From Zootoca vivipara (taxonomy: Eukaryota): a DNA stretch of 64,000 nucleotides. Below are positions 7,128-63,849 of the stretch, one piece after another. The translations under genes were made by a program, and so were the position numbers. Under the pieces are notes generated by a model, which did not search any database, was not told where the DNA came from, and worked only from the letters and a program-made list of their open reading frames with translations. The stretch spans positions 38,316,001 to 38,380,000 of the forward strand of contig NC_083292.1 in the NCBI RefSeq assembly GCF_963506605.1. The letters run 5' to 3'. Numbering within the stretch: position 1 is the stretch's first letter; each line of letters begins with the position of its first letter.

Positions 7128-7300
7128 CTGCTCGGCTCCGGCTCCCTGGAGCGCCCCGGTGTCGTGTCCGCCTCGGAGAGGGGCAGCTCGCCCAGCGGCT
7201 CCGCAGGCTCCCCGCCAGGTCCCTCTCCCGACTGCGGGGCGGCCTCCGCCTCCTCGACCGCTTCCTGCTTCTCCGCTCCGGCCCGGCCCCGGGTCCCCTC
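7128..7300 (-). other. ZNF687: Non-coding first exon of the next minus-strand gene, probably ZNF687 (coding exons would lie left of this window)
   Basis: Minus-strand donor GAGCAG|GTAGGC at 7128/7127 inside a CpG island, with a G-rich sense-strand tract downstream as at the PSMD4 and PIP5K1A first introns. Identity rests only on synteny (PIP5K1A-PSMD4-ZNF687 are co-oriented in mammals). No coding sequence seen; the 5' end is approximate. Confidence 0.5.
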
Positions 7301-7979
7301 ATTGGCGAGGCTGGTTGCCGCTCTGAGGGTGACCTCCCGGTTGCCTGGCGCTCCATTGGGCGAACGGGACGTCGGTCAAGAGAGGCTCCCGGTCTCCCCG
7401 CCCGCCATTGGGCAAAAGCGGCTATCAGTCAAAGAGTACGTTCCGCCCTCCCCAAACTCGGTCCTCGTCGGGGGCGGGGCACAATCGTTCCGCTCGCTGG
7501 GCAGCCCTACTGGCTGGGAGGCCTGCCGCTCAAATGGCTCGCGCCCTCCTCATCCGCTGTCTATTTGGTGCTTTGCCAAGCAGAGCCAGGAGGAGAGATG
7601 TAGTCAGCTGGGTGAGCCTCCCACCGGCCAGCGTCTATTGGCTAAGGTATACCTATCATTCTCCAAGATATCCAACTAACTATTGGCTAGGGCTGCTTGC
7701 CACTCAGCTCGGTGCCAAACAGCCTTTCTATTGGCTGCGAGCCTCAAGGCGGCCGGGCTTTAATTTCATTCGCTGGCCACCTGAGGGAATACAGAAACGG
7801 CAGCAGGTGCCCATTGGCTGAGGCTTCCCGTCTCAGACAAGAACCGCCTATTAGTATTCGGCAGGGGAGATGGGCGGGGCTTGCAGGGGGCGGGAAATAG
7901 CGTCCCACTCTCTACCTTCTAATTGGCTGTACTTCGTGCTTTTTAAAACGAACAAACCACCAGCGAAATAAAAAAAATT

Positions 7980-8058
7980 CCTTCAGTAGCGCCTTAAAGA
8001 CCAACTAAGTTTTTTATTTTGGTATGAGCTTTCGTGTGCATGCACACTTCGTCAGATC
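7980..8058. mobile_element. Short Penelope-like retroelement fragment
   Basis: CAGTAGCGCCTTAAAGACCAAC...GGTATGAGCTTTCGTG...CACTTC resembles common reptile Penelope termini (recall). Confidence 0.4.
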
Positions 8059-10604
8059 CAGCACTTAGGCTTATTGGGGGAAATCCGTGTCACTCAAATG
8101 AGTTGCCCCCGCCTGAGGCGTCTCACGTCACTTTACTATTGGAAGGCGGGCCGTATTCTTGCCATTCAAAATAATGACTGAGCCCTCTAATAGCTGCACG
8201 CGTGAAGGAACGCCGAAGATCTGGGTGGCGATTGGCCAAAGCAAACGTCCGTCCAAACACTCCTCGCAGGAGGCAGAATGAATGGAAAGCAGCAGTGCCG
8301 CAAGGGATTCTGGGATAGTGGCCTTTAAATGAAGACGCGCAAAGGAGGTCTGAGCGTGAGGCATTATGGGGGAGTAGCGCACGGGATTCTGGGTAATGAC
8401 ACCCTTGACCTAACAAATTGATTCTTTTACATCTGGATCAAACCTTACACAACTGCACCTTCTTGCACCTTCACAACTGCAAGCTCCATTTAGGACATGT
8501 TATTTAATATTAATTAATGGTATTACAACTTAATTTTTTTATTGTTATAAATAATGTTTCTACCAAGGTTGCGGGACACCTGCAGCATGCAATGTGCTGC
8601 TGAGCTATAAGTGGTCAGCATGGCCAGTCCTTGGCGGGAGTTGTAGCGCAGCAACAATGGAAGTGCCTAGGGTTCTTGCCTAGGGAACTTTCCAAAGAGG
8701 AATACAACAGGAAGAGCCTCCCAACTGTGTATGCTCTGTACATTTAAAGCACCCTCCCCAAAAATCCTGGGAACTGTAGTTTACAGAGCTACAATACTCA
8801 GGAAAATTCTAGTCCTCATGGTTCTGATATAAAACAGGAAACTTCCGAGTCAGACCACTGGTGGTCTGTGTACCTCGATGCGGCTCAAGACGGCGACCAA
8901 CAAGTTAAAGCATGCAGTGCCCTCAAGGCCTCCCCGTCCCCTTTTCTCTGAGCCTGGGAGGCATTGTCCTTTGTCCTCCCACCTTGCCAAGGGGAGCCAA
9001 ATGATTTTCATCTCCCGCCGTCCACTTCTCCTTCGCTGCCCTATCGCTGTGATTGGGGTGCATCAGCTTGTAAACAATCTTGCTTTTATGTGCCTCCGAA
9101 ATCAGGCTCTTTCCACCCCGCCACCCTCCCTGAGAGCCAAGGCCTTTCGCTTGGAAGTTTTCCGAGCCGATCGAGTGATGCGGCAGTTTCTCCCGAAAAC
9201 AGGGCCTCGTCTGTGCCTCGGTCCGCTCCGTTTTCAACAGCGAGGTTATCGGGGGAGAGCCTCGGCCTCTCTTTCAAAAGGGCCTTTTCTTCCCAGCATG
9301 TCAGGTGGTGGAACCTGAGAGAGTCGGCCGCAAGCCAGAAAGCTTTTGGCTGGAGGAATGAAGTCTCCTTTCCTCGCCCCCCCCCCCCCCCGACTTCTGC
9401 CGCTCCTCAGAGGGCTCCTGGAATAAAGGGTTGACTATCCTTTAAGTGTAGATCAGAACATCCGCAAAACACGAGGTTGCCATATTTTATTGCATGCTTT
9501 TGAACGACAGTGGGGGAGAGACAAAGGGAAATTCAGCAGCAGGTCAAATCCTGCTGAATGTAAGGATTAGCGGGGGAGGAGGCAGGCTTCACCAGACGAA
9601 TATCTGCCTATTACACGGCAGCCACGCTGGAGAGGAAACTGCTGTAGTTGTAATTCCACCTGTCACTTTATTGAATATAATTTCTTTAAAAAACAGCACA
9701 ACAATCTGCGCTCTTGAAGTAAGCAGCAAATAATTGTAGCGTTGGAAGGGACCTGCAAGGGTCATCTAGCGCAACCCCCTGCAATTTGTCTTGCTTGTCT
9801 GGATGAGGGATGGAGGGGTGTGTGTATGTGTGTACTCAAACAGAGGAAACATATAGACAGACTGCCTTACAGTGAGTCGGACCATTGTGGTCCATTTAGC
9901 TCAATATTGTCCTCACTGACTGGCAGCAGCTCTCCAGGTTTTCGGAGAAGGGGGTTGTCCAAGCCCTAAGTCGAAACGCCAGAGATCAAACCAGGGATGT
10001 TCTGCGTGCAAAGCAGGTGCTCTGCCACAGAGGTATACAGCCGTTCCCTTAAAAATAGGCTTAAGATTCTCATCCTCATGGTTAAAGGTCTGTTTGCAGT
10101 ATTGCACTCTAGAGTCCAAGCAGGGAATGAAAAAAGAAGAGTGTCTATCAGGGCATGAGCAGAGTGCACCCACTTTCTCATTAGGAGATTGGGTATCCCA
10201 GCCAGAGATCCTTTTTAACTGTAAAATACGATGAAGGTTCATGCCAAATGCTTGCCTTACTCCGAATGCATTCATTGAAATTAAGGGGAATTTGCAGGGG
10301 TTGGTCTAGATGTCCTCAGGGTCCCTTCTATCTCCAGAATTCTGCGATTAACTTAGATCTATTGGTTTCAGGGAGTCTCCTTCCACTTCGCTGGATGCAA
10401 CCCTCTGTAACCCTCAGCCCACAAGTGGAAACAGAACTAGCCCTATAGAAAAGGCCTTTGCACCTTGCTGGGCAGCAGGTATTTGGGGGCAGAAGGTGGG
10501 GAGAGGCGGCAAAAATTTATTCAGTGCCCCCATGAGAGCCTGGAGCTGGGATGTGCACAGAGGGGGCTATTGTTTGGTAGGGCTCTGTGCCAGGCAGCCG
10601 AGAC

Positions 10605-10614
10605 TTTATAAGAG
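10605..10614 (+). promoter_or_regulatory. TATA box of the SFTPC-like gene
   Basis: TTTATAAGAG about 85 nt upstream of the ATG at 10692, consistent with a TSS near 10635-10640. Confidence 0.6.
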
Positions 10615-10691
10615 CTTCCCGCTGGCATCTCACACGCCTACGGAGAAGCCAAAGTCTGGATCCATTCAGCCCTACCGTTGGGGAAGAGAAA

Positions 10692-11155
10692 ATGGTGAGC
10701 GAGGACAAGAACCCCGAATCATGGCCGGCAGGGCTGCACCTCAAGAGCCCACCCTACGTAAGTAGTTCACTTTAGAAGTGAGGGGGGGAAGGCCACCTCA
10801 ATTTTTAAACCCCATTGTGTCTCCCGTTCCTTTAACCGCTGCTCAACAGGCAGGAATCCATCAGGGGAAGTTCTTCCCAGCCTTGTGTGGTTGCCGTGTG
10901 CAATGGCGGGGGAGAGAAGCTGCACCGGTGGGATTTCTGCCTGCTGCCCTGCTAGGGGGTAGGGGTGCAACTTCCAGTGTGGGAATGCCTACGGTTATTG
11001 ACTTGCCATTTTTTAAATCTTCGGGGCTCGGTTCTCCAGCGCGACGAGAGCACTCTGAAGCATGTGCAGAGTGCAAATGCAGAAACAGGCTGACATTTCA
11101 CAGATTTTAGAAAAGGGATTTCAGGTGCTGTGAGATGCCATTACCTTCATCTTTC

Positions 11156-11210
<55 letters not shown>

Positions 11211-14200
11211 CTCTCCCTTCTCAACCCTTCCCCAATTTTTGTTCAGACTCTCCACTCCAGCCTTGAGCTGGCAGAGCCTCCTGTCGCCTCAAACCGCAAG
11301 CTGGTGATTCTGATGGTGGGCGCCGTCTCAGCCCTCAGCATCAGCATCGTGGGGGTCCTGCTGGCCACCTACCTCGGGCGGGCGGACTGCATCCAGGTAC
11401 GTTACGGAGGGACAGTGGTGACGGAGGCAGCACCTGCCTTCTGCCTTCATAGACGGAAGTCCTGGGGGTCTGAATCCAGCACATTCTGCCTTCCGCCACT
11501 GCAGAAGTCTTGGGTGGCCAGATCCAGCACCTTTGGCCAAGGCAGCCGCATTTCAATCTGTTTCCCCGTTTCCTTTCTCGGCAGAGAGACTCCTTCAGCT
11601 TCCTCCCTCCCCAAGTCAACGTCCAGAACGAAGCGTCTCTCTTGCTGGCGCTCAGCGAACTGGGTGAACAAGGCGTCGCTCCAGGAATCACCTGCGACTT
11701 AAGAAACGTGAGTCGCAGAATCGCCAATAGGGCCAGAATTAGTGTCACAAGAGGTTATGAGGACAGTGTTGCTGTTTTTATCTCCCAGTAGGGTGTCCTT
11801 AAGTTGTCCGGTAGTGCCTTAGCGGTGACTGAACCACACTAAGGTGGATTTAAGAACATAGGAAGCTGCTTTGAGTCAGACCGGTGGTGGATCTATCTAC
11901 AACGACTGACAGCAGCTGTCCAGGGCTTCAGGTTGTGAGGTTTTTCTGGAGATACTGGCAATTGGACCGGGAACCTTTTGCATGCCAAGCAGACATGGCA
12001 GCTCTTTCACTGAGCTACTGCCNNNNNNNNNNNNNNNNNNNNNNNNNNNNNNNNNNNNNNNNNNNNNNNNNNNNNNNNNNNNNNNNNNNNNNNNNNNNNN
12101 NNNNNNNNNNNNNNNNNNNNNNNNNNNNNNNNNNNNNNNNNNNNNNNNNNNNNNNNNNNNNNNNNNNNNNNNNNNNNNNNNNNNNNNNNNNNNNNNNNTT
12201 TCAAGCTCTCTCTAGAGCAGGCATGGCCAAACTTGGCCCTCCAGATGTTTTGGGACTACAACTCCCATCATCCCTAGCTAACAGGACCAGTGGTCAGGGA
12301 TGATGGGAATTGTAGTTCCAAAACATGCCTACTCTAGAGATATCCAAAGTGCATCAGAGTTAATTAAACCACACTGAGGTGCTCTTAGGAGCATGGGAGT
12401 GGCTCTTTTATTTATTTGAAATGTATAGCCTGCGTTAATGCAATAAAAAAAGACAGAGCTGAAAACAAAAATAACCTTTGCAAAATGGATGAGATGTAGC
12501 GGAAACAACAGCCAGGCTGAACGACCCGAAAATCATACCTGGGGACAGGAGGGAGAGTGGGATTCGGACGCTGCTGGGCCAAGGGGTTTGGGAGCCTCCT
12601 CTGCCTGGTCCACCTCTCCCCTCTCTCTCCCCCAACAGCACTTGATGGTGTACCATGGCCAGCCAGAAGGGTGTGTGGCCCGAAAGATGGAGGTGTCTGA
12701 ACCGCTCCCCTCCTGCCAGGAACTGGAGGCGTACTTCCAAGCTGTCTTGGTGAGGATCAGCAGGTGTCCTGGAGGCGGTGCTAGGCCATAGCTGCCAAGT
12801 TTTCCCTTTTCTCGCGAGGAAGCCTATTCAGCATAAGGGAAAATCCCTGTAAAAAAGGGATAACTTGGCAGCTATGTGCTAGGCACATGGGGAGTAGCTT
12901 GGACTTATGGCCCTTGCCCTGAAAGCAAAGCAAGATCCTAGTCCTCATTGTTTTGAGGACAGGGCTGATTTGAACAGGAGCAGAGGGAAGTGCCTTAGAG
13001 CAAAGGTCCATCTTGAGAAACTGAACCTTCTGTATTTGAGGCATCAGCTCTACCACTGAGCTACGGCCCTTTCCTTAAAAGTAATTCTAAGATTCCGGTC
13101 GTCATGGTTCTGAAAGAAACGCTGACATATAATTAAATGCAGCATCTCAAAACAAAGCAATCATGGCGCCGCCTTTGAACTGTTATTTTAAACATGATTA
13201 ATGCAGACATGATCAGTAGTGGTTTATTATTTTATACATAAAGGCATTTTTTTACTTTATACATTTTTATCTGTATGCAAACTCGTTTAATAATAGTTTG
13301 GTAATAGTTGATCTCTGGTTTTAAAAATACGGTTTTAACTGTACGGTTTTATGTGTGACTGCTGGAAACTGCTCTGATTTCTCCCCCCCCCCCCCTTGAA
13401 CAAATACCAGTATATAGCTGTTGTTATATACTGCAAACCAACAAATTATACCAGCCGACTGAAAATCATACGGTTAAAAGCGATTTAGCAGCACAAACCC
13501 CCTGCATGTTTGCTCTGAAGTAAGCCCCACTTGTTCAAAGGGTTTTACTCTCAGGTAAATAGGCCTAGCGGGGGTTGCAGACTTAGAGGTGTTTCATCTG
13601 ACAACAGACTGCAGTTTAACTAATATAGGTGCCAACTAAGGGAGCCAAAAAAGGGGGTAACTCATCCTTCAAGGTGTATTCGGGGGGGGGGGTCTGAAGA
13701 GTCTTGCTTCCAGCTTCAAGACTTGTGGACTGGGGTCCACCTCTTCAGATGCATGAAGTATCATCTTGAGTTGCAAATATAACACCCACAGGTGCTCAGA
13801 GGGGTGGTTGTGGTTCTGAATTCAGAAGGAAGTTTGCAGCAAGTTTAAGGACAAGTACCATATACTTGTCCTTAAACTTTAAGTTTGAGGACAAGTACCG
13901 TATAAGGGACGCGGGTGGCACTGTGGGTTAAACCACAGAGCCTAGGGCTTGCCAATCAGGTCGGCGGTTCGAATCCCCATGAGGGGGTGAGCTCCCGTTG
14001 CTCGGTCCCTGCTCCTGCCAACCTAGCAGTTCGAAAGCGCGTCAAAGTGCAAGTAGATAAATAGGGGGAAGGCAAACAGCGTTTCCGTGCGCTGCTCTGG
14101 TTCGCCAGAAGCGGCTTGGTCATGCTGGCCACATGACCTGGAAGCCAATAACACGAGATGAGCGCCGCAACCCCAGAGTCGGTCACGACTGGACCTAATG

Positions 14201-15547
14201 GTCAGGGGTCCCTTTACCTTTACCATATACCTAACAGAGTTATGTAGCTAGGTTGGAGTGTCTAAACCAAAACAGTCCAAAAACACTAAAGTGAAGACCC
14301 AGTGTCAATAAGCAGGGAGTTCCAGAGATCGGTGATGTCTCATTAAAGGGCTGAGAATGTGTGTGAGTACAGCAGCAAGGATTCTCTGTGCACAGAAATG
14401 GAAGGAGAGAAAACACACCCAGAGGAAGAATGGTTGATGAAAACCTTGGAATATGCAGAGATGGCAAAATTGACGGCACTGATAAAAGATACAAATTTAG
14501 AATGTTTTAAAGAAGACTGGAAACCATTTCAAGTTTTTATAAAAAGTTACTTCCCGTATGTGAAGACCACAGCGGGGATTGAAATGTAAGAAAACAGCAG
14601 AATATATTAAGAAACATTTTAGAAATTTGGTAAGACGGAACCTTCAAATGCAATTGTGTGTAACTTGCGTCATATTGAGAGCATGAAGCGAAAACATTGT
14701 ATATAGCAGTTGTCAAACCTGCTTTTGCTGGCTCGGTTTCTTGTTGCAGAAAAACGCCACGCTGGGTATCACCTCGGAGGTGCAGATCGTGGGGACAGCA
14801 TCCCTGGGCAGCCTCACCACACTGCTGTGTAGCAACAAGCCCACCTACCTGGTCAACAGTTTTGCACGTAAGTAGGGTGGAAAGGTGCCGCTGGAGTGGA
14901 CTGTACAGATTGTACCTCTGTCGGAGGGTGGGGGGGAAGACAGAGAGATAAAGGTCTGGATATCTGATTTAGGAGCTGGGAGGAAGCTTTGAACTATACG
15001 TCCCAGCAACAGCAGCAACCCTGGCCATTTGGCCAATGCTTGCTAGGGCTGATGGGAGTTGTAATTCAGCAACAGCTGGAGGGCCGAAGGTTCCCCCACA
15101 CTTTGTTTAGAGATACCCAGATCTCTCTCGCTCGGTAAAAATCCAGCCGATGTAGTTTGTAAAATGCCCAATTTTGGAATGTGCCAAAAGTTCCTCTAGT
15201 CCAAGGAGGGCTAATCCCTGGTTTGGGGAGCCGGTTTGCACATACACACCCAAAAGAATTTGGATCAAGTTTTTTTTTTAATGATTAAAGTAGACACAGG
15301 ATTGCACACAGAAGCTTTTTGGAAAAAGGTGAGAGAATGGCATCAAAGGCGCCCTTTGGTTGGAAAAGGGAGAGCTTACATCACAAGAGCCTTTTGGCAG
15401 AACGGGGAATAGAATAGCATCGCACACAAACACAACAGGGGATGCCTTTCCTGTTAGACAGAACTTGTTTAGCCCACCTCTTCTTAAAATATACTTTCCC
15501 ATTTCTTTGCAGCTTCTCCAAGGCACACCATGAGCAGACTTGCTTAA
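10692..15547 (+). CDS. Pro-surfactant-protein-C-like type II membrane BRICHOS-domain protein (probable SFTPC paralog), 191-200 aa
   Basis: GT-AG exons: 10692-10757 (MVSEDKNPESWPAGLHLKSPPY), 11247-11396 (TLHSSLELAEPPVASNRKLVILMVGAVSALSISIVGVLLATYLGRADCIQ, single TM), 11585-11707 (123 nt, ...LALSE...GITCDLRN), 12639-12749 (111 nt, HLMVYHGQPEGCVARKMEVSEPLPSCQELEAYFQAVL), 14750-14867 (KNAT...SLGSLTTLLCSNKPTYLVNSFA). It then either reads through RK-stop (14875) or splices to 15513-15547 (PSPRHTMSRLA-stop). Introns 1-4 are phase 0 and the frame is open. BRICHOS Asp and both Cys are present. Confidence 0.85.
11151..11212. repeat. (CTTT)n microsatellite just upstream of the SFTPC-like exon 2 acceptor
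   Basis: Seen directly. Confidence 0.95.
12023..12198. other. Assembly gap (N run)
   Basis: 176 N. Confidence 1.
12218..12331. mobile_element. hAT-type MITE with 8-bp TSD
   Basis: CAGGCATG...CATGCCTA termini flanked by CTCTAGAG on both sides; internal GGACTACAACTCCCATCA/TGATGGGAATTGTAGT palindrome. Many degenerate copies of this family occur through the window. Confidence 0.8.
13906..14224 (+). mobile_element. Sauria SINE (lacertid POM/Squam1 type), near full length
   Basis: tRNA-like head GGGACGCGGGTGGCACTGTGG...GGTTCGAATCCCC, Bov-B-like 3' part GAGTCGGTCACGACTGGACC, (CCTTTA)n tail, imperfect TSD TACC(G/A)TATA. Confidence 0.9.
14415..14700 (+). mobile_element. L1-like LINE 3' fragment in intron 4 of the SFTPC-like gene
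   Basis: EEWLMKTLEYAEMAKLTALIKD...EDWKPF resembles the squamate L1 ORF2 C-terminus; related sequence at about 46250-46430. Confidence 0.6.
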
Positions 15548-18511: not shown

Positions 18512-25039
<6,528 letters not shown>

Positions 25040-46900: not shown

Positions 46901-49900
46901 AAGGTTTCCTAAAGGAATCTGGTTGGACACTGTGAGAACAGGATGCTGGACTAGATGGGCCACTGGCCTGATTCAGCAGTCTTATTCTTATGAGAACTTC
47001 ACACAACACTGCTGAACTAGAGTTGACCACAAGATGTGGCTGTGCCAGCTACAGTCCAAAACATCTGGAGGGCCCCAGCTTCGGAAAGGCTGCATTGGAG
47101 CTATCCTACCCTTACCAAGGATTGGTGGTGGGAAGGTGCACTGAATTATAAAAGCTGTGCTGCTTACATTTCAGTGCCAAGTGACCCACCAGTTTGCCAT
47201 CTTCCCTTCCCCATCTACGCTGACATTTAAGCTACCTACCAGCTGAAGAAAACACCTATCTCTGAATGGGTACAAACATAAAAGCCTGCTGGATCAGGCC
47301 AATGGCCCATCTAGTCCAGCATCCTGTTCCCTCAGTGGTCAACCAGACCAGATGCCTGTGGGAAACTCATAAGGAGCATTGGAGCACAAGAGCACTCTCC
47401 CGTGCTGTGTTTTCCGGCAACTGGTATTCAGAAGCATTGCTGCCTCCAACTGTGGAGGCAGAGCACAGCCATCCCAGCTAGCAGCCCTCAATAGCCCTCT
47501 CCTCCTCCATGAATTTGTTTAATCCTCTTTTAAAGCATCTGCTGTAAGCAATCACTTCCTCCTGTGGGAGTGAATTTCATAGTACAACTACAGTCTGCAG
47601 AAGCTTCTGCTGCAATAAATCAGCCTTTCAAGAAAGGTTCCACAAGACTTTCTGTTACATTTTTAAATAGGCAGTTTAGTCTGCAAAATAATAAAAGAAA
47701 TCCAGCCGGATCAGAACATGGCAACAGGCTTTTGCTCGGCGGAGCTTTATAATGCATGCAGAACATTGGTGCTGAAAAGAACTGCGCTGGCTGCCAGTTA
47801 GTTACTAGGCCAAGTTCAAGGTGCTCATTCTGGTATTTTAATTGAGATTTTATGGCTGCGTTTTGGCTTTCCTTAAAAGAAAAAGCAATATACACATCCT
47901 TTTGATATAAAATAAAATAAATCTGCCTTGGAAAATCTGCTGGAACCTCATGACGCAAGCCGTCCCTGACCCCCCCCCCCAAGCTGCTGCATTAAAGCAA
48001 AATCCAGGTAAATATATATCTGCTACTGCCAGGCCCAGATCAGATCACCGCTTATCTTCCAAATGGCTCCAGGCGTCTTCGTCTGCAAGAAGCGCTTACG
48101 TACTATACTTTTATCTGGCTTTTTGGACAATTATCTCCTCCAACTGTGGCATGCAAATATTTAACAAGAGAAGGAGAGGGTGGTGATGTCCTGGCATTAG
48201 GCTTACACACATAGAAACAAACCAACAAGGAGGCAAGATGAAAAGGGGGCAGGGAGTGGAAGAAAAGGCCCTTGAGAAGGTAATCGACACCTCTTGGCCA
48301 GGGCTACCGGTACCAATTTGCTAGGAAAGATATAGGTAGCTGTGTTAGAGGAAATGTCAAAATCACAATAAGGTGATTTATCCTCTTTATTTGGATGGAC
48401 TAACAATTGTGAGCAAACTTTCGAGGTATCGAAATTCTTCTTCAGGCAGAACGTTAAGCAAAAGGTGGGAGACAGGATAGAAAGAAAAGGCTGAACAGTC
48501 CCAAAGAATGTTGTTGGTGAGACATTTAAGATGGAACATGGGAGATACTAAGCAGACTTCAGATTATCTTTCTTGGGGTGCAGTTTGTCTGAATCAAGGC
48601 TCATAGCTAAACTCGCCCCTCACTGACTATGGGCTAGTAAGTCAGTGTGTTGCTTAACTGCAGCTCCCATCAGTCCCAGCGAGTAGGGTCAATGGTGAGG
48701 GATCATGATGGGAGTTGTAGTTCAGCAACATTCAGGGGCCAAAGGCTCCTTCCCCATGCCTGACTTAAGTTAGAGCCATGCAGAACGTTGATGGGGACAG
48801 GAGAGGCAAATGGTGGAACACCACAAATCAACAACCAGTTTTGAATGCGGTGAAACAGAGGAATTCACAAAAGGGAGAAACAAGATAAATCTGTGTATGT
48901 TGCAGGACCGAGGAGAAAAAGTAAGCACCAGCTCTATTCAAAACACATGGTCGTCTGCGGGAATGGGTGCGCCCAGGCAAGCCTGCTGCATGGTGCCCAA
49001 TATTATTCATTGTTTTTTATCGAGCCTGTCGGAGAATGTGATGGAAGGACGCACCCCGAAAACGGCCTCACTGGATTCAAGTTCCGTCTCGTTTGGCAAT
49101 TTATTTCTAATACCAGCCAGGCTGTGCGTCTCTGGGAAACACACAAGCCAGCCGCAAAGGAGAAAAATCACCTCCCTTTTGCCCTTAGCATCCAGCCTTA
49201 GTAGACTTCCTTTGTACACAGAGGTTCCACTCAGCTACCGTGTTTCCCCTTTTTTAAGACACCGTCTTACAACAATTTTTTCTCAAAAAAACACAGGGTG
49301 GCTTACTTTCGGTGGGATGTCTTATTTTTTACTACCGGTATGGTTTTTATGGTATTACCCCTTATGGCCTCCTCGGCTGGGCCAGACCGCTGACTCAGGG
49401 CACTGCTGGGTGCTTGGCGCTGCAGCAGCCGGTTCCGGGTGGTGGGGCGGCAGGCCTCCTCGGCTGGGCCAGGCGAGGCCGCTGGTTCAGGTGCTCCACC
49501 TGATCGTCTAATAATGCAATGAGCACAGTTGCAAAGAACAATATCCCTGAGCTGCTTTCTCATCCAGGTCCTGCGCTTGGCTCCCAACTGAAGGCACCGC
49601 GCGCAGCGTGGGGAGTTCGCTGGGGCGGAAGGGGCCTCGGGAAACTTGGTTGCCCAGGGAGCGCCCCAACCAAACTCCATGCAACCTTCCCCCCGCCCCC
49701 TGATGCCCCTTTCTGAGCCCTTCCCCTTCCCCAGGGGCGCGGGGGTAGGAAGGGAAAAGGGGAAGCGCGAGCCCTTCCTTGGTGCTTCGGCCTTGAGGAC
49801 TCTCGCCGGGCACCTGTGCTTGGGTCCGCCGGGAGCTGGCCCGCCAGGGCGAGACTTGTTGAGGCCGCCCTCCGGCGTCGCCCCTTCGCTCTGCGCCTGG

Positions 49901-52900
49901 CCCCTCCCGTGGGGCTGGAGCTCGCCCTGGGCTCGCCGGGCAGCGCGCTCGCAGTGCCTCTGCCGCGGTGGCGGCAGCGGCAACAGCGGCTCTTCCTTGC
50001 GCTCTTTCCCAGCTCCCGCAGGCAGAATGGTGGCCATAGCCCAGCAGCCCTCAGCGGGCTGCGGGGCGGGTCCGTAGCTGGTGCGGGGTGGTGTCCTTTG
50101 CTGCGATCGGGAGCCAGAAGCGCCGGGCGTCGCGCCAAGTGTCCGCGCACCCCTCTTACTCTCGCTCTCCATGGATGAGAGAGCAGGGGGCGGCCCCAGG
50201 GTGCCCGGCTCGGAGAGCCCCAACCGGGCTGTGGAGTAGCTGCTGGAGCTCAACAACATTATCGAGAACCAGCAGAAACTGCTGGAGACGCAGCGGCGCC
50301 AGATCAAGGAGCTGGGCTCACTGCTTCTTCCAGGGAGACTTTACAGTGTCTTCATGCGGCAGAGGGGCTGCCCGCCGCCGGGTCTGCTGCCCTCAGGGAG
50401 ACAAGAAACAGGGTCCTCTTAAATGGTGTTTTTAAACGCCATTTTCTTCCCCGTGCTTCCCGCCTCCGCTGCATCGGAGCGCAGCAGAACAGCTGATTGG
50501 AGCCTGGCTTCACAACTAAGCGCACTCCTGCAGTGCCGGCTGCAAGGAGTGACTCTATGAGTGGAGGTGCCTGTGGGGGTTGGTTTCCGCGGTGTGGAAG
50601 TATGGCTTATTTTCGGGGAATGCCTTATATTGCTCAGATGCTTAAAAACCCTGCTATGGCTTACTTAATGACTACGTATTAAAAAGGGGGAAACACGGTA
50701 TCAGGGGTGTTGGCAAGAGTTTGCTATCCTTCACAAATGCATAAGAACCCAAGAAGGGCCCTGCAGCTGAATCCGGCTAAAGGGAGCCCACCTGGTGCAG
50801 CAGCCGGTTCTTGAAGTGGCCAGCCAGATGCCCCGATGGAAAGTCAGTAAGGTGTGCCCGAGTGCAACAGCAACTCTCTCCTCTTGTGGTTCACAGCAAC
50901 AGGCATTCAGAGGCATATTGCTGCCTCCGAGTAGAAGCAGAACATAGCCATGGCAGCTAGTGGCCACTGAGAACTTTCTAAACACCTTCTGAAGCCATCC
51001 AACTTGGCAGCCATACACGTAAGAGGGAATTCCCTTGTTTCGCTATGCCTTACGTAGGGCTCAGAAGAGCCCTACTGGATCAGGTTGAAGGCTTGTCTAG
51101 CTCAGCCTCCTGATCTCACAGTGGCCAAGCGGATGCCTCAAAAGCAGCACAAAAACCTGAGCACGAAAGCGTTCCCCCCACTTGCAATTCCCAGCAGCTG
51201 CCATTTAGAGGTCCCCTGCCCCCTGAGTGGATGCAGAACATAGTATCTGATTGTGCCTGCAGGCAGACATTTATGGACTCTGCAGCAGCTGAAGGAAGGC
51301 CGGTAAACCAAAACTGAATCTTTGACAAGACAGAAACGGTGGGTGGTTCTTGGGTCTGGGAAAATGGGTTTATCCTGCTCTGGCTGGGGCTTCACTTCCC
51401 CAGACAGAGCAGGTATGCAGAGAGCGGGGCCCATCAGGGCAGCTCAATTTGCCCCACAAAGTACTGGCCCATGATGTCATCAGGCAGCACCACTGCAAGA
51501 CAACACTTAAGGAAAAAATGTGCTGGTTTAGGTGGGGTTAGAAGGAGGCAAAACTTCTTCCCTTGGCTGGAAACCCTTTCAAACTCCTACTTTACCCAGG
51601 TTAGACATTTGTCATCTTAAAAGAAAATGAAAACAAGGGGGAAGTTTTCCAGGCTGGATGCTTAGGGGAGATTCCTGCTCGCCACAGGAGACCAGGAAAG
51701 TGGGCCTATTGGCAAGGCTGGTGCCAAACGGTTCTTGAGAGTGTGAGTTTCCTTGCAGGGCTCCTAGCAACAGTACAAGCTGCTTGAGGGGAAATCCCCT
51801 CCTCCTTATTCCTTTCCGCCTTTCCATCCCAATGCAAACTCCCTAAGAGCCAAGATCAGATTTCGAAGATCCCAGTCAAATTGGTGCTGGGGTTTTTCCG
51901 CCTGTCCCAACCCCAGGATGAAAGCAAACCCTGTGACCTCCCTTCGACAGCCATCATTCGTCTCCAATGTCAGACAAAAAAACTTCAGCTTCACTCTTTA
52001 ATCTGCTGAGATAAAGATCCAAGGCAGAGGCAGCTCCACTTTGGAGACTCATCAACACAGAGATAATTGTAAGGTTAGGACTGCTTACCAGTCCTGTTCT
52101 TTGCTGGAGGATTTTTTTTGGGGGGAGGCGGGCACGGTGGGAGAGGAGAAAAGATAACAAGCAGCTCAGTAGCCTTTGCTACTGAACCACAGCAGAGTAG
52201 AATATAGCACTGTGTGCTGCAGAAATCCAAGTCTCAGGAAACTGAAGGCTTTTTAAAACCACCACCACCACTACCACCCAGTTTCTAACTCTTAGGGAGA
52301 CACGCTCAACAGTGGAAACCTCAGAAGCCAGAGAGGGAACTGCTTGGGTTTCTTATGGATCACAAGAAGGGTGTCAAGCTGAGATTGTGCCTGTGCAGAA
52401 TCAGAAGTCTTCCCCCAGCTAGTTCAAAAGTGTGTGGAACTGCCTTTAGAAGTACCTGTGCGACGCTACCTTCAGACCCCTCCTCAAAGCCCACCCTTTC
52501 TGCAAAACCTCTGCCGCAACCTCTTAACCCCACAATCCACTTTAGCCAAGTGCAAGCACATGCAGCTGGAATAATGGCATACCACTGGATTATAGGCTGT
52601 TTATTTGTACAGTGTGGAAAAAGTTCCATGCACATAGATGGTGATATATAAATAAAAATAAAGAGGTTAAATAGGAATGTAAAAAGCTGCCTTATACTGA
52701 GTAGGGCCCTTGGACCATTAGCTCAGTACTGTCTCCACTGACAGGAAGCAGCTCTCCAGGGTTGCAGGAAAGGAGTCTTCCCCAGCCCTGTCTGGAAATG
52801 CCACTGGGGACTGAACCTAGGACCTTCTGCAGATGCTCCACCTAAAAATAAGTAAGATCCTAGTCCTCATGGCTCTGAACAAAGGACTAGTTTTAATAGG

Positions 52901-55900
52901 AAACTGCCTTATACCAAGTCCCTTGTCCATCTAGCTCAGTAATGTCAGCACTGACTAGCAGCAACTCCTCGTAGTTTCAGGCAGGGTGTCTTTCCCAGCC
53001 CTACCTGGAGATGCTAACCTAGGACCTTCTGCATGCAAAGCAGATGCTCCACCCACTGAGCTACAGCCCTTCCCACAGCCACAGACTCCCTCAGCTAAAA
53101 CCCTACTCTCTCCACTTCAGCCTCTTTAAATCTGAAACACAGGGAAAGCAAACTGGACCCACTCTACAGGGTTGTTGTCAAGAATCCCTGAGCCAATTTA
53201 TGTAAAGGCTTGGACGTGGGTAGACCCTCCCAGCTCCCCTGAGCCCCAGCCAGCATGATCAATGGTCAGGGATGATGGCAGCTGCGGTCTGACACCACAG
53301 CATCCAGACAGCACAACGCTAGGTACTTTTGTGCTAAGCAATAGAACTAGCAGTGACTTGCGAGGTGCTGGAAGACTCTGTAGGACCTAACCGCCCTGTA
53401 CTATCAAGCACTTTGCAAAGCAGAACTAAGCAACAGGCACAGCCTGTGTCACAGAACNNNNNNNNNNNNNNNNNNNNNNNNNNNNNNNNNNNNNNNNNNN
53501 NNNNNNNNNNNNNNNNNNNNNNNNNNNNNNNNNNNNNNNNNNNNNNNNNNNNNNNNNNNNNNNNNNNNNNNNNNNNNNNNNNNNNNNNNNNNNNNNNNNN
53601 NNNNNNNNNNNNNNNNNNNNNNNNNNNNNNNNNNNNNNNNNNNNNNNNNNNNNNNNNCATTCACATTTTTTTTCCAAAATATAGTCGGCCCTCCACAAGG
53701 TCTGAGGGACAGTGGACCGGCCCCCTGCTGAAAAGGTTTTGCTGACTCCTGGTTTAGAGACTAAGAACAGAGTTTGTGAGCCAGAAAGCTGGAGCTAGGA
53801 GCTCAGAAGACAAGGGGACAGAGTGAGGCTTAGGCAAGCCATATTTCTGAGTTGCACCCTGGTGGTGATTTTGTCAGATTTTTCCCACCTCCCCCCACCC
53901 CAATCTATAAAAAAGGTGGTATAATATTATCCCACTGCATATGGAAGGTGTAAATCTTAACATAACCAAGGCTGCAAAGAACTTAGAAGCTGCCACCTTA
54001 AAAAAAACACCAAACTCACTAGAAAGTTTAAACTGTGCCGGACGGTTTAAGCTCGAATTATTTCATTTACTGAATTTAGAGTGCTGTCTACAGACAGACG
54101 CATTGCAATTGGTTATTTTTGGCACATGACCTATTTCAAAGTGAAAGGAAAGGGCTGTCCAGCCCTGGTGGGTGTTCTCTATTATCCCCCTCCCCCACCC
54201 AACATCTAGACACAGACAATCCGCAAAGAGTGGCTCATACTGGTAGGTGGGCAGGATAGAGACAGAAGGGCAGACCAGACAAATTTTTACGTCCATCCAT
54301 AAAGCCAGAGATAGGCAAAGAAACAGCCCTTGGATTATATGTGGGCAGGATACCAAAAGGACATCATGAGGGTTGTACCCAAGGAACCAAAAACTGAACA
54401 GCTGATTCATTTTTAGCATGTTCATCCTGCCTTTCTATAAAAAAAGCACATCAGGAGGAGAGGGAGAAAGAGTAGATTCAAAATTAGGGTGAAATTAAAA
54501 ATATGAGACTTGCACAATAGCAGAAGTGCCTGATGAAAAAGGAAACCTATCAGAAAGTTTCAGCTGCCTGCAAAAACGTGAGCTAGGAGAGTGTCTTCTG
54601 GCAGGATGTTCCACTGCCCTGGAGCCAGCACCAAAAAGGCTCTACTTAGTATGCCATAACAAAAAGGGTTGGGCTCAGAAGATGACCCCAAGCACTGCTG
54701 AAAATCAACAGGTGTAGGGGCTGATCAGCCCCCTTGATAGAAGACCAGCAACAATAACTTTGTGGTATCAGTGCTACAAAAATAAAAGAAGATGGCTGCA
54801 CTAGTTTCCCTGGCCTGTTTGACAAGTCTCACTTGCCAAAAAATCTTACCCAACAAAGAAACACACTAGGAGCTGTGAGTGGTGTTGGAAGGCCTGATGT
54901 AGCCCTGAAGTGGTACATTTCAAAGGCCTACCACCATATTATCTGCTCATCCCTTGAGAACTTTGACTCCAGACTGGTTGTTGTGTGAGAATAAGCTAGA
55001 GGGAAATTGTAACAAAATCAAGACTTTTCAAACCAGCTCTTCAGAGCAGCTCCTAGGAAATCAGCTGCTGTGGGGTGGGGAAAATACGCATTTGAAAGGG
55101 GGTGGCGACAGAGAGAGAAAATGAACTTTTTCTTTACTGTCTGAAAGTGTCTTGTTTTGGAAGCAGCCAATAATATTCAGTTTCAAATTTTCACCACTGA
55201 GAAGGTCACACACATCCAGGCTTTCTGACTTACAAAGTTTTTACACTGCAGGTTTAAACTGCTGCCTTCTATGTGTCATGGTGTTGTCTAAAAATAAAAT
55301 AATAATTATTCTTGCAAATATAAATGTTAATTAAATCCACACCCTATAATCATTAAGGGGGAATTCAAGGTCTCATTCCTTCCTAAAGCATGGAATACAA
55401 AGAGGGAAACATACCATCCCCGAAGTCCAACAAGGTGGTTGAAGTTCAAAGGTTAAGAAATCTCCCTTTTCAGTGATCTCATCCATGTCCCTCCAAGATG
55501 TACACTTCAGCCCTGCAGCCTGCTGCTATCTGATAGGAGAAGACAGGTAAGAAGCTTCCCTCAGGACCGGTGGACTCCCACCCAGAGGAGTCCAGCAACC
55601 CAGCCTCTGAAGCCTGCCCATGACTCTGTGACAACCAGGTACACCACCCTTCTTCTGAAAAGACAAATCGTGACATCAAGGGAAAGGATGACTTATGAAC
55701 ATGCTCCCATTGACCCCGGCACTGCAACAGCAAAAACCCCTCACCCTAATTCAGGAAGTGGGCTGGACCCTGCTCGAATCATTCCCACAGAAGAAGCACC
55801 ACCACTTCCTATTCTGCTTTTGTCCGCCTCCCACCACCCACAAAAGGGTCTCAACTCCTTCTGACCTGCAAATAATACTCCTACAACTCCAGGAAAAAAA

Positions 55901-60585: not shown

Positions 60586-62052
60586 TTTATTATTTACACC
60601 CTGCCCATCTGGCCGGGTTTTCCCAGCCCTCTGGGTGGCTTACAACATATCTAAAAACTTTATTAAAACATCAGTCCTTGAACTTCCCTAAACAGGGCTG
60701 CCTTCAGATGCCTTCTAAAAGTCAGATAGTTGTTTATTTCCTTGACATCTGAAGGGAGGGTGTTCTACCGGGCGGGCACTACTACTGAGAAAGCCCTCTG
60801 CCTGGTTCCCTGTAACTGTAACAGAACTAGAAACTGATTTTAATGGATGACTGGCCCCTATTTTGTTCCAGTCTTGAATCTAAATTATATTGTCTATATC
60901 CAGTGGTATTTTTCTAGAAAAAAGAGGTGCCGGAACTCACCATGAACACCTCCCTCGTTCTCTTAGAATGGCAATGGCGCCCACCTGAGGGGTGCCAGAA
61001 ATAAGTTCCAGCAAGTTCTGACTGAAAAAAAGCCCTGCCTATTATCTGATTCCCAGACCTTCAACAGTGGTTCCACAGTACCATAAGTAACATGCAGGGG
61101 GTTGGACTAGAATGATGATCCTTCAACAAGATGATCTTTAGGGGCACCTTCCAGTTCTCCACTGTTATGATTCTATGTACCAATACATGAAAAGCTAAGA
61201 TGGCTCTTCAGCTCTCTAAGAATGAAGTCACCAGTGTTTCAGTTGAAAGGAACCTCCATTCAAAGAGGCAGTCAACCTCTGGATATCAGTTGTGGGTGGA
61301 GGGAGAGGGAAAATTGCAGGATTTGTGGGCTTTCTGGAGGAATCTGTTTCACCAGTGTTGGTGGTGGTGGGGCGAGTTAGCCTTCATTCAGCAGAGCAGC
61401 GATGGCATTCTTGGAAGAGTCCACCAGCAAATACTAGCCACAAGCAGCAGATGAAACTCTTAAATTTTTTATTAAATTTGATGTTAAATTCGTAACAAAT
61501 TTTGAAAAGCAATAAAAATAAATTGGTAAAAAAGAGAAGTAGATGAAACTTCCAAATGCAGAGGTAGTGCACGTCTGAGTGGTGCTGCTTTGCAGGCTGT
61601 CTCTGCCTGCATTTGGAGACAGAATGCTGAACTTTGCAAAGGGCAGGGGATTAAGCAAATACATGAAAAATAGGCCTATCGGAGCATGATTGTTACATGA
61701 ATTTCCAGTTTCTGCAAGGGCATTAATAAAAGTAGGCTTTCAAAGAGGCAGCCAATAAAAGTAGGCTGTCTTCTGAACACCCAGCTTGCAGATGCTCCCC
61801 GTAAGCGTCTTGTTGGAAACCCATCGACTTTCTCGGCGTTCGATTCCCCTCCACAATCTCTGCGTCGACGCTCAACTAGTCGTGTCTACCCACCATCGGC
61901 GTCCGTTAGCTCGGCGCTCGATGGCTCCTCCCTCCCGTCATTCAAGCGCAGGCCTCCCGGAGACGTTGCGAACAGCCCCGCAACGCAGGGCGCGTGGTCG
62001 CGAGCCGACGGCATCGATCGCCACTCCGCTCTCCCTGGGGAAAGACTAAAAA

Positions 62053-63849
62053 ATGGCGGCGGCGGCGGCGGCGGCGTCCGCTTCGACGGGCCTGGCTGGA
62101 GGCCGAGCGCCGCGGCGGACGGCAGGGAACCGGCTCTCGGGGCTGCTCGAAGCGGAGGAAGAGGACGAGTTTTATAAGACGACATACGGGGGCTTCACGG
62201 AGGTAGGGGGCGGGACTTGGGTTGATGGGCAGCGGTAGGGTGCGTGGTTGGTCCAGGAGCGGGCTGGACTCCGAGCTCGTGGCCGAGGCGGCGCTTGCTT
62301 GTGATTGGCTGGAAGGAGGCGGGATAGGCGGGGCTACAGAGGCATGGGTCCCGTTTAGTTTGTAGTGTGTGCAATACGTATAATATAAATATTAATTTCT
62401 GGAAAGTTTGAACCAAGAAGGTCCAGCGCTTTCTCTCCACCAGCAGTTCTACCCGCATCTTCTTTTCTGCAACAGGTTGCTTGGCAGTAGACTGCTCCTG
62501 GACAGGGTGGTTTCTTTTAGTGATGGTGGCTGAATAAGTCATCTTGGTAGATAGAGGGAAGTATCTCATTTACATCCTACCTATCTTCTGCCAGGAGCTC
62601 AAGGTAGCCTACGTAATTATTTCCCCTCATTTAACTCCCACAACGACCCTGTGTGGTAGGCTAGGCAGTCACCCAGTCAGCTTCATGGCTTGAGTGGGAA
62701 TTTGAACCCTGGTCACCTAGGTATTGGTATGACACTTTAACCACACTGATTTTGGATGTCCTTTCCCATTTTCTCCTTTTTTTACAAGGTGTGGCTTAAA
62801 GGCTAGAGGGGTGGGTAAAAGATCTGCTGCGGTTGGCTTGGGGGACACACAAATTGAGTCTCTTGCCATTGCTGTTCAGAGAGCGAGCTCTCCCCACCCA
62901 ACCATCTTCTCTCGGCTGCCCTGCAGGAATCTGGTGATGATGAGTACAAAGGCGACCAGTCAGACAGTGACGACGAAGTAGATTCCGACTTTGATATTGA
63001 CGAGGGAGATGAGCCCAGCAGCGATCAGGATGACAATGAGCCCAAGCGGAAGCGGAGGGTTGTCACCAAAGCCTACAAGGTATGTGTAACAGGAGATGGG
63101 CAGAGCCGGGCATGCGGATGCCCTCCTGAAACGCCAAATCCATTAATGGGAGAGAGCAGGGCTGGTGGGAATGCTGAGCTCAAACTGCAGCAGTGTCTGA
63201 GTCGCTCTTGTGTCTCCACTGAGAGGCAAGCAAAGCGGAGCGAGGCATTTGCCCACTGCTGCAATGGAGACTGCTGGGAGTGCAGAAAAAGAAAGTGGTG
63301 AGGGAGGTGTTTGTGTGCAAGAGGCAATACTCTCGTCCCATGCGAACCGTGGGATTATCCATGGGGCGGGGAGAGTTGGCAACTTTCTGCCTGGGGTTTG
63401 AGGAGAGTGGGCAGCACATGCAAGGAGTCCCTGTGGGAAGTCATTTTAAGAACTACCATTTAGCTTTTTAAGGACCTGAATTTGCTTTTCCTCTTCCCTC
63501 CCCCTCCCTTTTTTCCTTTTGTGTCCTGCTTTCTTAGACCATAAGTCTAGAAGGGACTGTCTTGTTTTTGATTGATTGTATATAAGTTGCTCTGGGAGCC
63601 TTTTGTTGGTTGAAGAGTCAAGAAAATGTAAGCTCTGACCTTTCATGCTTTTTAAACACCTGGTGGCTTTTCATTCTGCTGTTGAATCACATCTATAAAC
63701 CGCCCTTCCTAATTTCTGTCGTTTGAATCCTCCGTAGGAACCCATCAAGAGCCTGAGGCCGAAGAAGGCAGACATTCCTGTAAGCAGCTCTCAGAAAGTG
63801 AGAGAGGAAAAGCTGGCCCCAGCCGAGCTCCAAGATGACCTCGGAGACA
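62053..63849 (+). CDS. VPS72: Vacuolar protein sorting 72 homolog (YL1, H2A.Z chaperone), exons 1-3; continues beyond the window
   Basis: Exons 62053-62202 (...LAGGRAPRRTAGNRLSGLLEAEEEDEFYKTTYGGFTE), 62927-63079 (ESGDDEY...DSDFDIDEGDE...TKAYK), 63738-63849 (EPIKSLRPKK...); GT-AG junctions. Confidence 0.97.

What the first reader, a model, noticed from the sequence alone, without database searches (positions are those of the whole stretch)
49238..50698. Pack-TIR-like element: a Tc1/mariner-type transposon that captured the IQSEC2 5' end and sits in a PIP5K1A intron
Seen: 23-bp TIRs (21/23 match) with TA duplications enclose about 1.1 kb of CpG-rich DNA containing the first 48 or so codons of IQSEC2, with an in-frame TAG, preceded by GC-rich UTR/promoter-like sequence. 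It contains the 5' end only and has no poly(A), so it is not a standard retrocopy, which would keep the 3' end. Established: gene-fragment capture by DNA transposons is common in plants (Pack-MULEs) and much less documented in vertebrates. Inference: transposon-mediated transduplication that created an ectopic CpG island oriented antisense to PIP5K1A. Retained CpGs suggest it is recent or unmethylated.
Basis: partly seen in the sequence, partly recalled or inferred. Interest (0 to 1): 0.8.

Follow-up and report, generated by a model that had tools for sequence, protein, structure and literature searches.

The report
Lizard transposon carrying IQSEC2 gene start
A 1.46-kb cut-and-paste transposon that carries a dead copy of the first 48 codons of the IQSEC2 gene, inside a CpG-rich block, jumped into an intron of PIP5K1A in this lizard species but not in two related species; this kind of gene-fragment capture is already known, and this is a cleanly documented, multi-copy example.

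Summary
The element (49238-50698) has 23-nt inverted ends (21/23) and TA on both sides. Contigs from two related species cross the site as ...CAGC-TA-TCAGG..., lacking exactly the 1463 letters. A second animal of the same species has both junctions. The ~120-140-nt terminal arms belong to a family with thousands of copies in all three species. The 1.2-kb GC-rich middle (GC 66%, CpG o/e 0.66) was found only in this species, at roughly 6-22 copy equivalents. One 94%-identical variant stands at about 12 times single-copy depth.

Codons 24-48 match the solved N-terminal coiled coil of IQSEC2 (E 4e-6). Codon 23 is TAG, and the similarity stops mid-domain. PIP5K1A lies on the minus strand, so the cargo is antisense. 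No RNA reads fell on the cargo.

It is a transposed, amplified Pack-TIR of the TA-targeting (Tc1/mariner-type) kind. Such elements are known in animals (Tan et al. 2021), though multicopy ones are rare. This scan has already reported several on other DNA of the same genome.

Two things remain untested. I could not reach the parental IQSEC2 locus, so the origin of the 700 bp upstream of the ATG is unknown. The transposase is also unidentified.

The parts
49236..49237 (.). Left copy of the TA target-site duplication
   Evidence: Related species carry a single TA here (joint 49235->50699, both = 2).
49238..49260 (+). Left terminal inverted repeat (23 nt)
   Evidence: 21/23 to the reverse complement of 50676-50698.
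49238..49360 (+). Left terminal arm ('chassis') shared with a very high-copy family. It contains a 30-nt motif (49299-49328) that recurs in direct orientation in the right arm.
   Evidence: summed depth is 29,000-89,000 in X3 against 13 for single-copy flanks, and is also very high in both related species; direct repeat, 25 of 29 aligned letters identical with one gap (30-column alignment).
49361..49469 (.). Inner left segment: GC 72%, with a 20-nt exact direct repeat (49366-49385 / 49453-49472). It is multi-copy in this species only and variable in other copies.
   Evidence: D4; depth 3043 in X3 (~230 times unique), against 11.5 and 24 in the related species. Other copies show 'goes back 67' joints and a 40-nt skip (49320->49361).
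49470..50170 (+). CpG-island-like block upstream of the ATG (GC 68%, CpG o/e 0.73, GC boxes). It is a putative 5'UTR/promoter, but its source was not tested.
   Evidence: depth 75-195 in X3. Exact-match pieces stand at 29-46 (2-3.5 times unique). It is almost absent from the related species.
50171..50315 (+). IQSEC2-like codons 1-48, with an in-frame TAG at codon 23 (50237-50239). The similarity ends inside the coiled-coil domain.
   Evidence: translation. PDB 9m46_A, IQSEC2, E 4.1e-6, 21/25 identical; the coiled coil is residues 23-74 (PMC11144418).
50316..50559 (-). Non-IQSEC2 GC-rich segment. Read on the minus strand it holds a CCAAT box (50496), an AAAATGGCG motif (50437) and a GTGAGC donor-like hexamer (50316) abutting the IQSEC2 piece. 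It may be a second captured gene start in convergent orientation (inference).
   Evidence: motifs; a 344-nt variant contig (50207-50563, depth 165) spans the junction, so the junction is shared by about 12 copies. The bin 50440-50536 stands at 1119 in X3 only.
50560..50698 (+). Right terminal arm ('chassis'), with the direct-repeat motif at 50603-50631 and the right TIR at 50676-50698
   Evidence: depth 23,600-89,900 in X3, and very high in the related species.
50699..50700 (.). Right copy of the TA target-site duplication

Best explanation
This is a non-autonomous cut-and-paste DNA transposon of the TA-targeting kind (Tc1/mariner/pogo-type by its ends). Only its ~120-140-nt terminal arms are transposon sequence.

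Its middle has been replaced by about 1.2 kb of GC-rich host-like DNA. That DNA is a patchwork which includes the start codon and first 48 codons of IQSEC2, now dead (TAG at codon 23, truncated inside the coiled coil).

The chimera was most probably formed elsewhere in the genome. The likely route is template switching during repair or replication of a chassis copy (inferred). A transposase supplied in trans then mobilised it through its intact ends, and it multiplied to roughly ten or more copies in this species (shown by depth).

One copy inserted at a TA in an upstream intron of PIP5K1A, after this species split from two relatives whose flanks differ by 5-6% (shown). At this site it is an antisense, CpG-island-like passenger with no sign of expression or function.
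For: - Ends: TIRs 21/23 plus TA/TA, unique in the window.
- Empty site: present in two related species on single contigs of 1721 and 3052 nt. The 2-letter ambiguity at the joint is the TA (table 5 and records 6 and 8). Flank divergence is 5-6% (records 6 and 8).
- Same species: both junctions are present in another sample, and no empty joint was seen (records 15 and 21).
- Copy number: the terminal arms have thousands of copy equivalents in all three species. The interior is found only in this species at 75-297 against 13 for unique sequence. A 94%-identical variant contig that spans the IQSEC2/non-IQSEC2 junction stands at depth 165, about 12 times unique (tables 2 and 8).
- Cargo identity: codons 24-48 match IQSEC2, and the match stops mid coiled coil.
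- Not a retrocopy: there is no poly(A).
- Literature: multicopy Pack-TIRs with empty orthologous sites are the signature of the transposition-dependent route in Tan et al..
Against: - The parental IQSEC2 locus was not compared, so the origin of the ~700 bp upstream of the ATG and the capture breakpoints are unknown.
- Summed contig depths are only a rough guide to copy number, and run X3 is not labelled DNA on record. Its even depth of 13 over intronic flanks suggests that it is DNA.
- The related species showed almost none of the cargo, and not even their own IQSEC2 exon 1 at 85% or better. This may come from the tool's filter against human-like conserved sequence or from poor assembly of GC-rich DNA, so absence of the cargo family there is not proven.
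- No autonomous partner or transposase was identified.
- The template-switch origin is inferred, not shown.
Confidence: 0.85

Rival explanations
1. In-situ, transposition-independent gap filling. A plain chassis copy inserted here first, and a later break inside it was patched with IQSEC2 and other host DNA at this very locus. This is the main route for single-copy Pack-TIRs in Tan et al. 2021.
For: It is the commonest origin of animal Pack-TIRs in the literature. A 30-nt direct repeat flanks the cargo within the two arms, which could be a repair scar. A 15-nt exact match links the cargo (49421-49435) to the flank 100 bp to the right (50796-50810) (D6).
Against: Both related species have a completely empty TA site, not a chassis without cargo. 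The cargo, including its internal chimeric junction, is present at several to about 12 times single-copy depth. The 15-nt match is not significant (blastn E 0.27).
Confidence: 0.06
2. The IQSEC2 piece entered through RNA: template switching onto the mRNA, or a 5'-truncation-free retro-like event inside the element. It would then not be a DNA-level copy of promoter plus exon 1.
For: Here the fragment contains only exon-1-type sequence, so nothing excludes RNA.
Against: There is no poly(A) and no 3' end. About 700 bp of CpG-island-like sequence with GC boxes precede the ATG, which is longer than a usual leader. No exon-exon junction is present that could show splicing.
Confidence: 0.12
3. The insert has been co-opted. 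Its CpG island would act as an antisense promoter or regulatory element within PIP5K1A, or the short ORF would be expressed.
For: CpG content is retained (o/e 0.66-0.75 against 0.2-0.3 in the flanks), which could mean an unmethylated state. GC boxes and a Kozak-like ATG are present.
Against: No RNA read lay on 49373-50439 in the one RNA run sampled, and only 0.6 in the next bin (50440-50536). That sample was 6% of the run, about 7.5 million reads, tissue unknown. The ORF is broken at codon 23. The site is empty in related species, so the insert is not conserved. High CpG is equally explained by youth.
Confidence: 0.05
4. Assembly chimera or chance inverted repeat around an ordinary CpG island.
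For: No single listed contig spans the whole element.
Against: Independent contigs from another sample match both junctions exactly. The boundary of presence/absence in two other species coincides to the base with the TIR ends and the TA. Chance expectation for the terminal pattern is 0.04.
Confidence: 0.01

Closest known systems
Pack-TIRs of animals (Tan et al. 2021, Nat Commun 12:4280; PMC8277862), especially the multicopy cases such as the Xenopus hAT-N8_XT element carrying the CAPSL 5'UTR
   Same: A host gene fragment sits between the two ends of one TIR element, is amplified by transposition to several sites, is absent from the orthologous site of an outgroup, and comes from the 5' end of a gene.
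   Different: The chassis here is TA-targeting (Tc1/mariner-type), not hAT. The apparent copy number (about 10 or more) exceeds the three copies of the frog case described in the main text. The host is a lizard, a group not mentioned in that paper's main text. The cargo looks mosaic. The parental copy was not verified at the 90% identity that paper's pipeline requires.
Pack-MULEs of rice and other plants
   Same: Non-autonomous TIR elements whose interiors are patchworks of GC-rich gene fragments, often 5' ends, and which multiply. This comparison is from my own knowledge of the Pack-MULE literature as summarised.
   Different: They belong to a different superfamily (Mutator, 9-10-bp duplications, long TIRs) and occur in plants.
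Other cargo-carrying copies of the same CCG...CGG / TA chassis reported by this scan in the same genome (cargos AGFG1, ATXN7L2, TRIM24, BMP8-like; notes s1-853935, s1-856131, s1-849343, s1-848604, s1-856125, s1-852027, s1-851738)
   Same: According to those notes: the same type of ends, a size of 1.1-1.5 kb, CpG-rich first-exon cargo, and tens of copies.
   Different: This report adds a base-exact empty site in two other species. I could not compare the sequences of those elements with this one.
Processed retrocopies (LINE-mediated)
   Same: A dead, partial copy of a gene at an ectopic site.
   Different: There is no poly(A), the 5' end is kept rather than the 3' end, TIRs are present, and the duplication is a 2-bp TA instead of a longer variable one.

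Membership tests
Pack-TIR (criteria of Tan et al. 2021) | Internal sequence of 100-5000 bp flanked by the two terminal inverted repeats of one and the same TIR element | tested here: met
   TIRs match at 21/23 and lie at the ends of a 1461-bp unit with a ~1.2-kb interior.
Pack-TIR (criteria of Tan et al. 2021) | The flanking ends are the true terminals of a known or repeated TE family (at least 10 bp of the consensus termini) | tested here: met
   Depth rises from 13 to about 89,000 at the bins holding the TIR ends, in three species. The empty site defines the termini to the base. No curated consensus was available to name the family.
Pack-TIR (criteria of Tan et al. 2021) | The internal sequence has a unique non-TE parental copy in the same genome (at least 90% identity, 80-120% length) | not testable with these tools
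   The rest of the genome cannot be searched here. Only protein-level similarity of 25 codons to IQSEC2 was shown. Word searches with cargo ORFs were blank.
Pack-TIR (criteria of Tan et al. 2021) | Not an intron-less retrocopy of a multi-exon parent | tested here: inconclusive
   There is no poly(A) and no exon-exon junction. The fragment covers only first-exon-type sequence, so splicing cannot be judged.
Tc1/mariner superfamily (including pogo/Tigger) non-autonomous element | 2-bp TA target-site duplication | tested here: met
   TA lies on both sides, and the empty site in two species holds a single TA (both = 2). A 3-bp duplication is excluded (CTA against TAT).
Tc1/mariner superfamily (including pogo/Tigger) non-autonomous element | Short TIRs (<100 bp) | tested here: met
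   The TIR is 23 nt, and inverted similarity does not extend further.
Tc1/mariner superfamily (including pogo/Tigger) non-autonomous element | Ends shared with an autonomous element that encodes a DDE/D transposase of that superfamily | not tested
   There is no autonomous copy in the window. Earlier notes call the chassis Tc2/pogo-like and mention a young Tigger (s1-851748), but I could not compare ends.
IQSEC2 (gene fragment) | Sequence match to the IQSEC2 N-terminal coiled coil | tested here: met
   [quoted passage not shown] The first 22 codons alone gave no hit. Distinction from IQSEC1/3 rests on my memory of their N-termini.
IQSEC2 (gene fragment) | IQ, Sec7 and PH domains | tested here: not met
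   No Pfam domain was found in any cargo ORF. The similarity ends at codon 48 of a protein in which the coiled coil alone spans residues 23-74. This is a fragment, not a gene.
CpG island (Gardiner-Garden and Frommer criteria, from my own knowledge) | More than 200 bp, GC above 50%, CpG observed/expected above 0.6 | tested here: met
   49361-50559: 1199 bp, GC 65.8%, o/e 0.66. 49470-50170: GC 68%, o/e 0.73.
Processed retrocopy | Poly(A) tail, 3'-end bias, long variable target-site duplication | tested here: not met
   The longest A run is 4, only the 5' end is present, and the duplication is TA.

The most novel reading that the evidence does not exclude
This copy is one product of an ongoing, species-specific burst. 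In that reading, a very abundant TA-targeting miniature transposon repeatedly swaps its middle for CpG-island 5' ends of host genes, possibly layer upon layer. Here there may be at least two gene starts in convergent orientation inside species-specific inner arms. The chimeras are then spread to tens of sites.

That would be a vertebrate counterpart of rice Pack-MULEs. It would seed ectopic CpG islands and promoters, some of them antisense inside genes such as PIP5K1A.
Probability: 0.3. Interest if true: 0.65.

Novelty: new member of a known kind. Interest (0 to 1): 0.4.

Why it matters
Gene-fragment capture by cut-and-paste transposons is well studied in plants. In animals it is thought to be mostly single-copy and independent of transposition: only 4 of 370 cases in Tan et al. 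2021 were multicopy.

This element was clearly transposed. It has a base-exact empty site in two sister species. It is also amplified, and it carries a CpG island with a gene start. Together with the sister cases this scan found in the same genome, it suggests that this lizard lineage hosts an active capture-and-spread system.

Such a system could be used to study three things in a vertebrate: how captures arise, why 5' CpG-rich gene ends are favoured, and whether scattered promoter copies alter host transcription.

On its own, this copy is most likely a neutral, dead passenger.

Tried and rejected
- **Reaching the parental IQSEC2 locus or sister copies through proteins.** A word search with the 59-aa post-stop piece gave 1 candidate and none scored. 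A word search with the 334-aa antisense ORF that spans the cargo gave no hit. Pfam on four cargo ORFs gave nothing meaningful. The ESM Atlas on the coiled-coil piece gave only sub-threshold unrelated clusters.
- **The big HMMER search was not run.** A 27-residue match of 29.9 bits (E 4e-6 in PDB) scales to E of about 0.04 in 1.84 billion sequences. The further chain to a lacertid genomic locus (another word search, then a contig look-up of a gene that may exceed 100 kb) looked unlikely to succeed on a night when that search is costly.
- **The two pieces of the broken reading frame were searched apart.** The first piece (22 aa) gave no PDB hit. An earlier PDB query was in the wrong frame and was discarded.
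- **Other blank searches.** Rfam found nothing in 48500-51500. The scan's notes, searched by sequence, gave nothing.
- **No further copy in the window.** No other chassis or cargo copy lies in the 64-kb window.
- **Rejected readings.** The retrocopy, assembly-chimera, 3-bp-duplication (PIF/Harbinger) and in-situ gap-filling readings were rejected. The reasons are given under rivals and membership.
- **Weak signals set aside.** The short joints linking ~48730 to 49235/6 have sides of only 20-27 letters next to a SINE-like repeat, so I treated them as repeat noise. The 87-nt-spaced repeat in the inner left arm did not reach the TRF threshold.


Full report
**1. What is in the sequence**

The stretch 49238-50698 (1461 bp) begins with CCGTGTTTCCCCTTTTTTAAGAC. 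It ends with the reverse complement of CCGTGTTTCCCCCTTTTTAATAC. These are 23-nt terminal inverted repeats matching at 21/23, and each is flanked by TA.

With up to three mismatches, the 20-nt terminal pattern occurs only at these two places in the 64-kb window. The chance expectation is 0.04. Neither the ends nor the interior recur elsewhere in the window. Inverted similarity stops after 23 nt. A 30-nt motif recurs in direct orientation in the two arms instead (49299-49328 and 50603-50631; 25 of 29 aligned letters identical, one gap).

The interior 49361-50559 has GC 65.8% and CpG o/e 0.66. The block 49470-50170 has GC 68% and o/e 0.73. The flanks have o/e 0.20-0.32. The interior therefore meets the usual CpG-island criteria.

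**2. The coding fragment**

An ATG in a Kozak-like context lies at 50171. The frame reads 22 codons, then TAG (50237-50239), then [25 protein letters not shown], and then unrelated sequence.

[quoted passage not shown] The match has E 4.1e-6, covers chain residues 16-42, and is 21/25 identical with the other four positions conservative. The first piece alone finds nothing. From memory, its ...[10 protein letters not shown] matches the residues just before that stretch in human IQSEC2, and the TAG stands where a tyrosine is. This point is not tool-tested.

The IQSEC2 coiled coil spans residues 23-74 (PMC11144418), so the copy ends at codon 48, in the middle of that domain. No Pfam domain occurs in any cargo ORF. 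There is no poly(A); the longest A run is 4. About 3% of the protein is present, and it is broken.

**3. Host gene**

PIP5K-domain exons lie on the minus strand between 38233 and 45614 (Pfam PF01504, E 4e-25). A YL1/VPS72 gene starts on the plus strand near 62050. PSMD4-like sequence lies near 22000 on the minus strand.

This is the PSMD4-PIP5K1A-VPS72 neighbourhood known from human 1q21 (my own knowledge). The element therefore sits in an upstream intron of PIP5K1A, and the IQSEC2 piece is antisense to it.

(a) *Empty site in two related species.* In organisms B and C, single contigs of 1721 and 3052 nt run through the left flank to 49235 and continue at 50699. They skip 1463 letters, and 2 letters fit on either side. 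Their flanks differ from the window by 5-6%. Neither holds a bare transposon at the site.

(b) *Present in a second sample of the same species.* In run X3, contigs without a single difference run from unique flank into each TIR (48500-49260 and 50674-51127). No empty joint was seen. The run's kind is not on record, but its even depth of 13 over intronic flanks suggests DNA.

(c) *Depth.* Single-copy flanks stand at about 13 in X3. The terminal arms stand at 24,000-90,000 in X3 and are similarly very high in B and C. The chassis is therefore a family with thousands of copies that is shared by the three species.
- The interior 49470-50440 stands at 75-297 in X3.
- Exact-match pieces stand at 29-46 (2-3.5 times unique).
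- One 344-nt variant contig (50207-50563, 21 substitutions, 13 gap letters) stands at 165, about 12 times unique.

That variant contig spans the junction between the IQSEC2 piece and the non-IQSEC2 DNA to its right. The chimeric cargo itself is therefore multi-copy. Parts of the variant are closer to IQSEC2 than this copy is. For example, the changes at 50301/2 and 50306 turn QIK into RIE, as in the PDB sequence. The variant is nevertheless also frame-shifted.

In B and C the interior is almost absent. The tool filters human-like conserved sequence, and GC-rich DNA assembles poorly. I therefore read this as 'cargo family not seen there', not as proof of absence.

(d) *Inner segments.* Two inner segments are much more abundant than the core, and in this species only. 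Segment 49373-49469 stands at about 230 times unique and 50440-50536 at about 85 times. Other copies vary there (a 40-nt skip, 'goes back 67' joints). This suggests a layered structure of chassis arms, then species-specific inner arms, then the IQSEC2-bearing core.

(e) *RNA.* In one RNA run (6% sampled, about 7.5 million reads, tissue unknown), no read lay on 49373-50439, and 50440-50536 averaged only 0.6. Reads on the arms run on into unlike sequence, so they come from other copies.

**5. The rest of the cargo**

To the right of codon 48, read on the minus strand, lie three motifs in order: a CCAAT box (50496), an AAAATGGCG motif (50437) and a GTGAGC hexamer (50316). The hexamer directly abuts the IQSEC2 piece.

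This looks like a second TATA-less promoter with a non-coding first exon and a splice donor, captured in convergent orientation. That reading is an inference from motifs only.

The origin of the 700 bp upstream of the ATG is untested. GC boxes, and an open reading frame that runs uninterrupted into the ATG, fit an IQSEC2 leader/promoter.

**6. How it most likely works**

Shown:
- Transposase-type insertion at TA in this lineage.
- Ends shared with a huge family.
- A cargo that is multi-copy with a shared internal junction.

Inferred:
- A chassis copy had its middle replaced by host DNA, through template switching during double-strand-gap repair or replication. These are the models discussed by Tan et al..
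- The chimera kept intact ends and was mobilised in trans by a TA-targeting Tc1/mariner/pogo-type transposase.

Tan et al.'s in-situ gap-filling route is disfavoured. The outgroups lack any transposon at the site, and the cargo is multi-copy.

RNA as the source of the IQSEC2 piece cannot be excluded.

A function is unlikely: the ORF is broken, the insert is not conserved, and no RNA was seen. High CpG content is explained by youth as well as by hypomethylation. Where this copy differs from its relatives in X3, it more often has A or T where they have G or C (37 places against 18). This fits the beginning of CpG decay.

**7. Comparison with what is known**

Pack-TIRs are described in animals: 370 in 100 genomes, 115 of them on TcMariner elements. 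Only four were multicopy (three in the frog, one in the alligator). Lizards are not mentioned in the main text (PMC8277862).

By that paper's criteria, this element meets the structural features. The one feature I could not test is a unique parental copy at 90% identity or more.

This scan has already reported the same kind of chassis with other first-exon cargos on other DNA of this same genome. The cargos were AGFG1, ATXN7L2, TRIM24 and BMP8-like, several of them said to be in tens of copies. Those notes are unchecked here. They also name the animal a lacertid lizard, which I did not verify independently.

**8. Verdict**

This is a new member of a known kind. It is notable for a base-exact empty site in two sister species and for its amplification, but on its own it is most likely a neutral passenger.

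The decisive missing step is alignment of the cargo to the species' own IQSEC2 locus, together with a count of TIR-bounded copies in the full assembly. N stretches (12023-12198, 53458-53657) were left untouched.

Noticed in passing
window 48600-48790: An interspersed repeat (contains GGGAGTTGTAGTTCAGCAACATTCAGG, SINE-like) stands at 1,000-15,000 summed depth in all three species and has RNA reads that run on into unlike sequence. It lies 450 bp left of the element.
   Followed up: no
window 50828-50924 and 51022-51215: Two further high-copy repeats lie in the right flank. Depth is 1,400-3,800 for the first and 10,000-42,000 for the second. Many 'goes back' joints appear between them in other copies, which suggests a rearranging repeat family.
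   Followed up: no
window 49421-49435 and 50796-50810: A 15-nt exact direct match (TGCAGCAGCCGGTTC) links the cargo and the unique right flank 100 bp outside the element, with loose similarity over about 27 nt. It is not significant by BLAST (E 0.27). It would be of interest if captures favour nearby templates.
   Followed up: partly
window 49299-49328 and 50603-50631: A 30-nt motif (TGGCTTAyTTTCGG..ATGyCTTAT) is present in direct, not inverted, orientation in the left and right arms. It is either a transposase-binding repeat or a duplication scar from the event that put the cargo in.
   Followed up: partly
window 62050-63298 (+) and about 61890-62200 (-): The first exons of VPS72 (YL1) lie head-to-head with the presumed PIP5K1A promoter, in a GC-rich bidirectional region. 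The upstream PIP5K1A exons between 45700 and 62000 were not mapped.
   Followed up: no
window 53350-53800: A very AT-rich stretch (GC 19-23%) surrounds the N run 53458-53657. The gap was left as it is.
   Followed up: no
window 50207-50563 (variant seen in run X3): The commonest relative of this cargo (about 12 times single-copy depth) lacks 10 nt at 50237, which removes the TAG, plus 3 more nt nearby. It has RIE where this copy has QIK. This copy therefore belongs to a rarer, more changed sub-lineage of the cargo family.
   Followed up: partly
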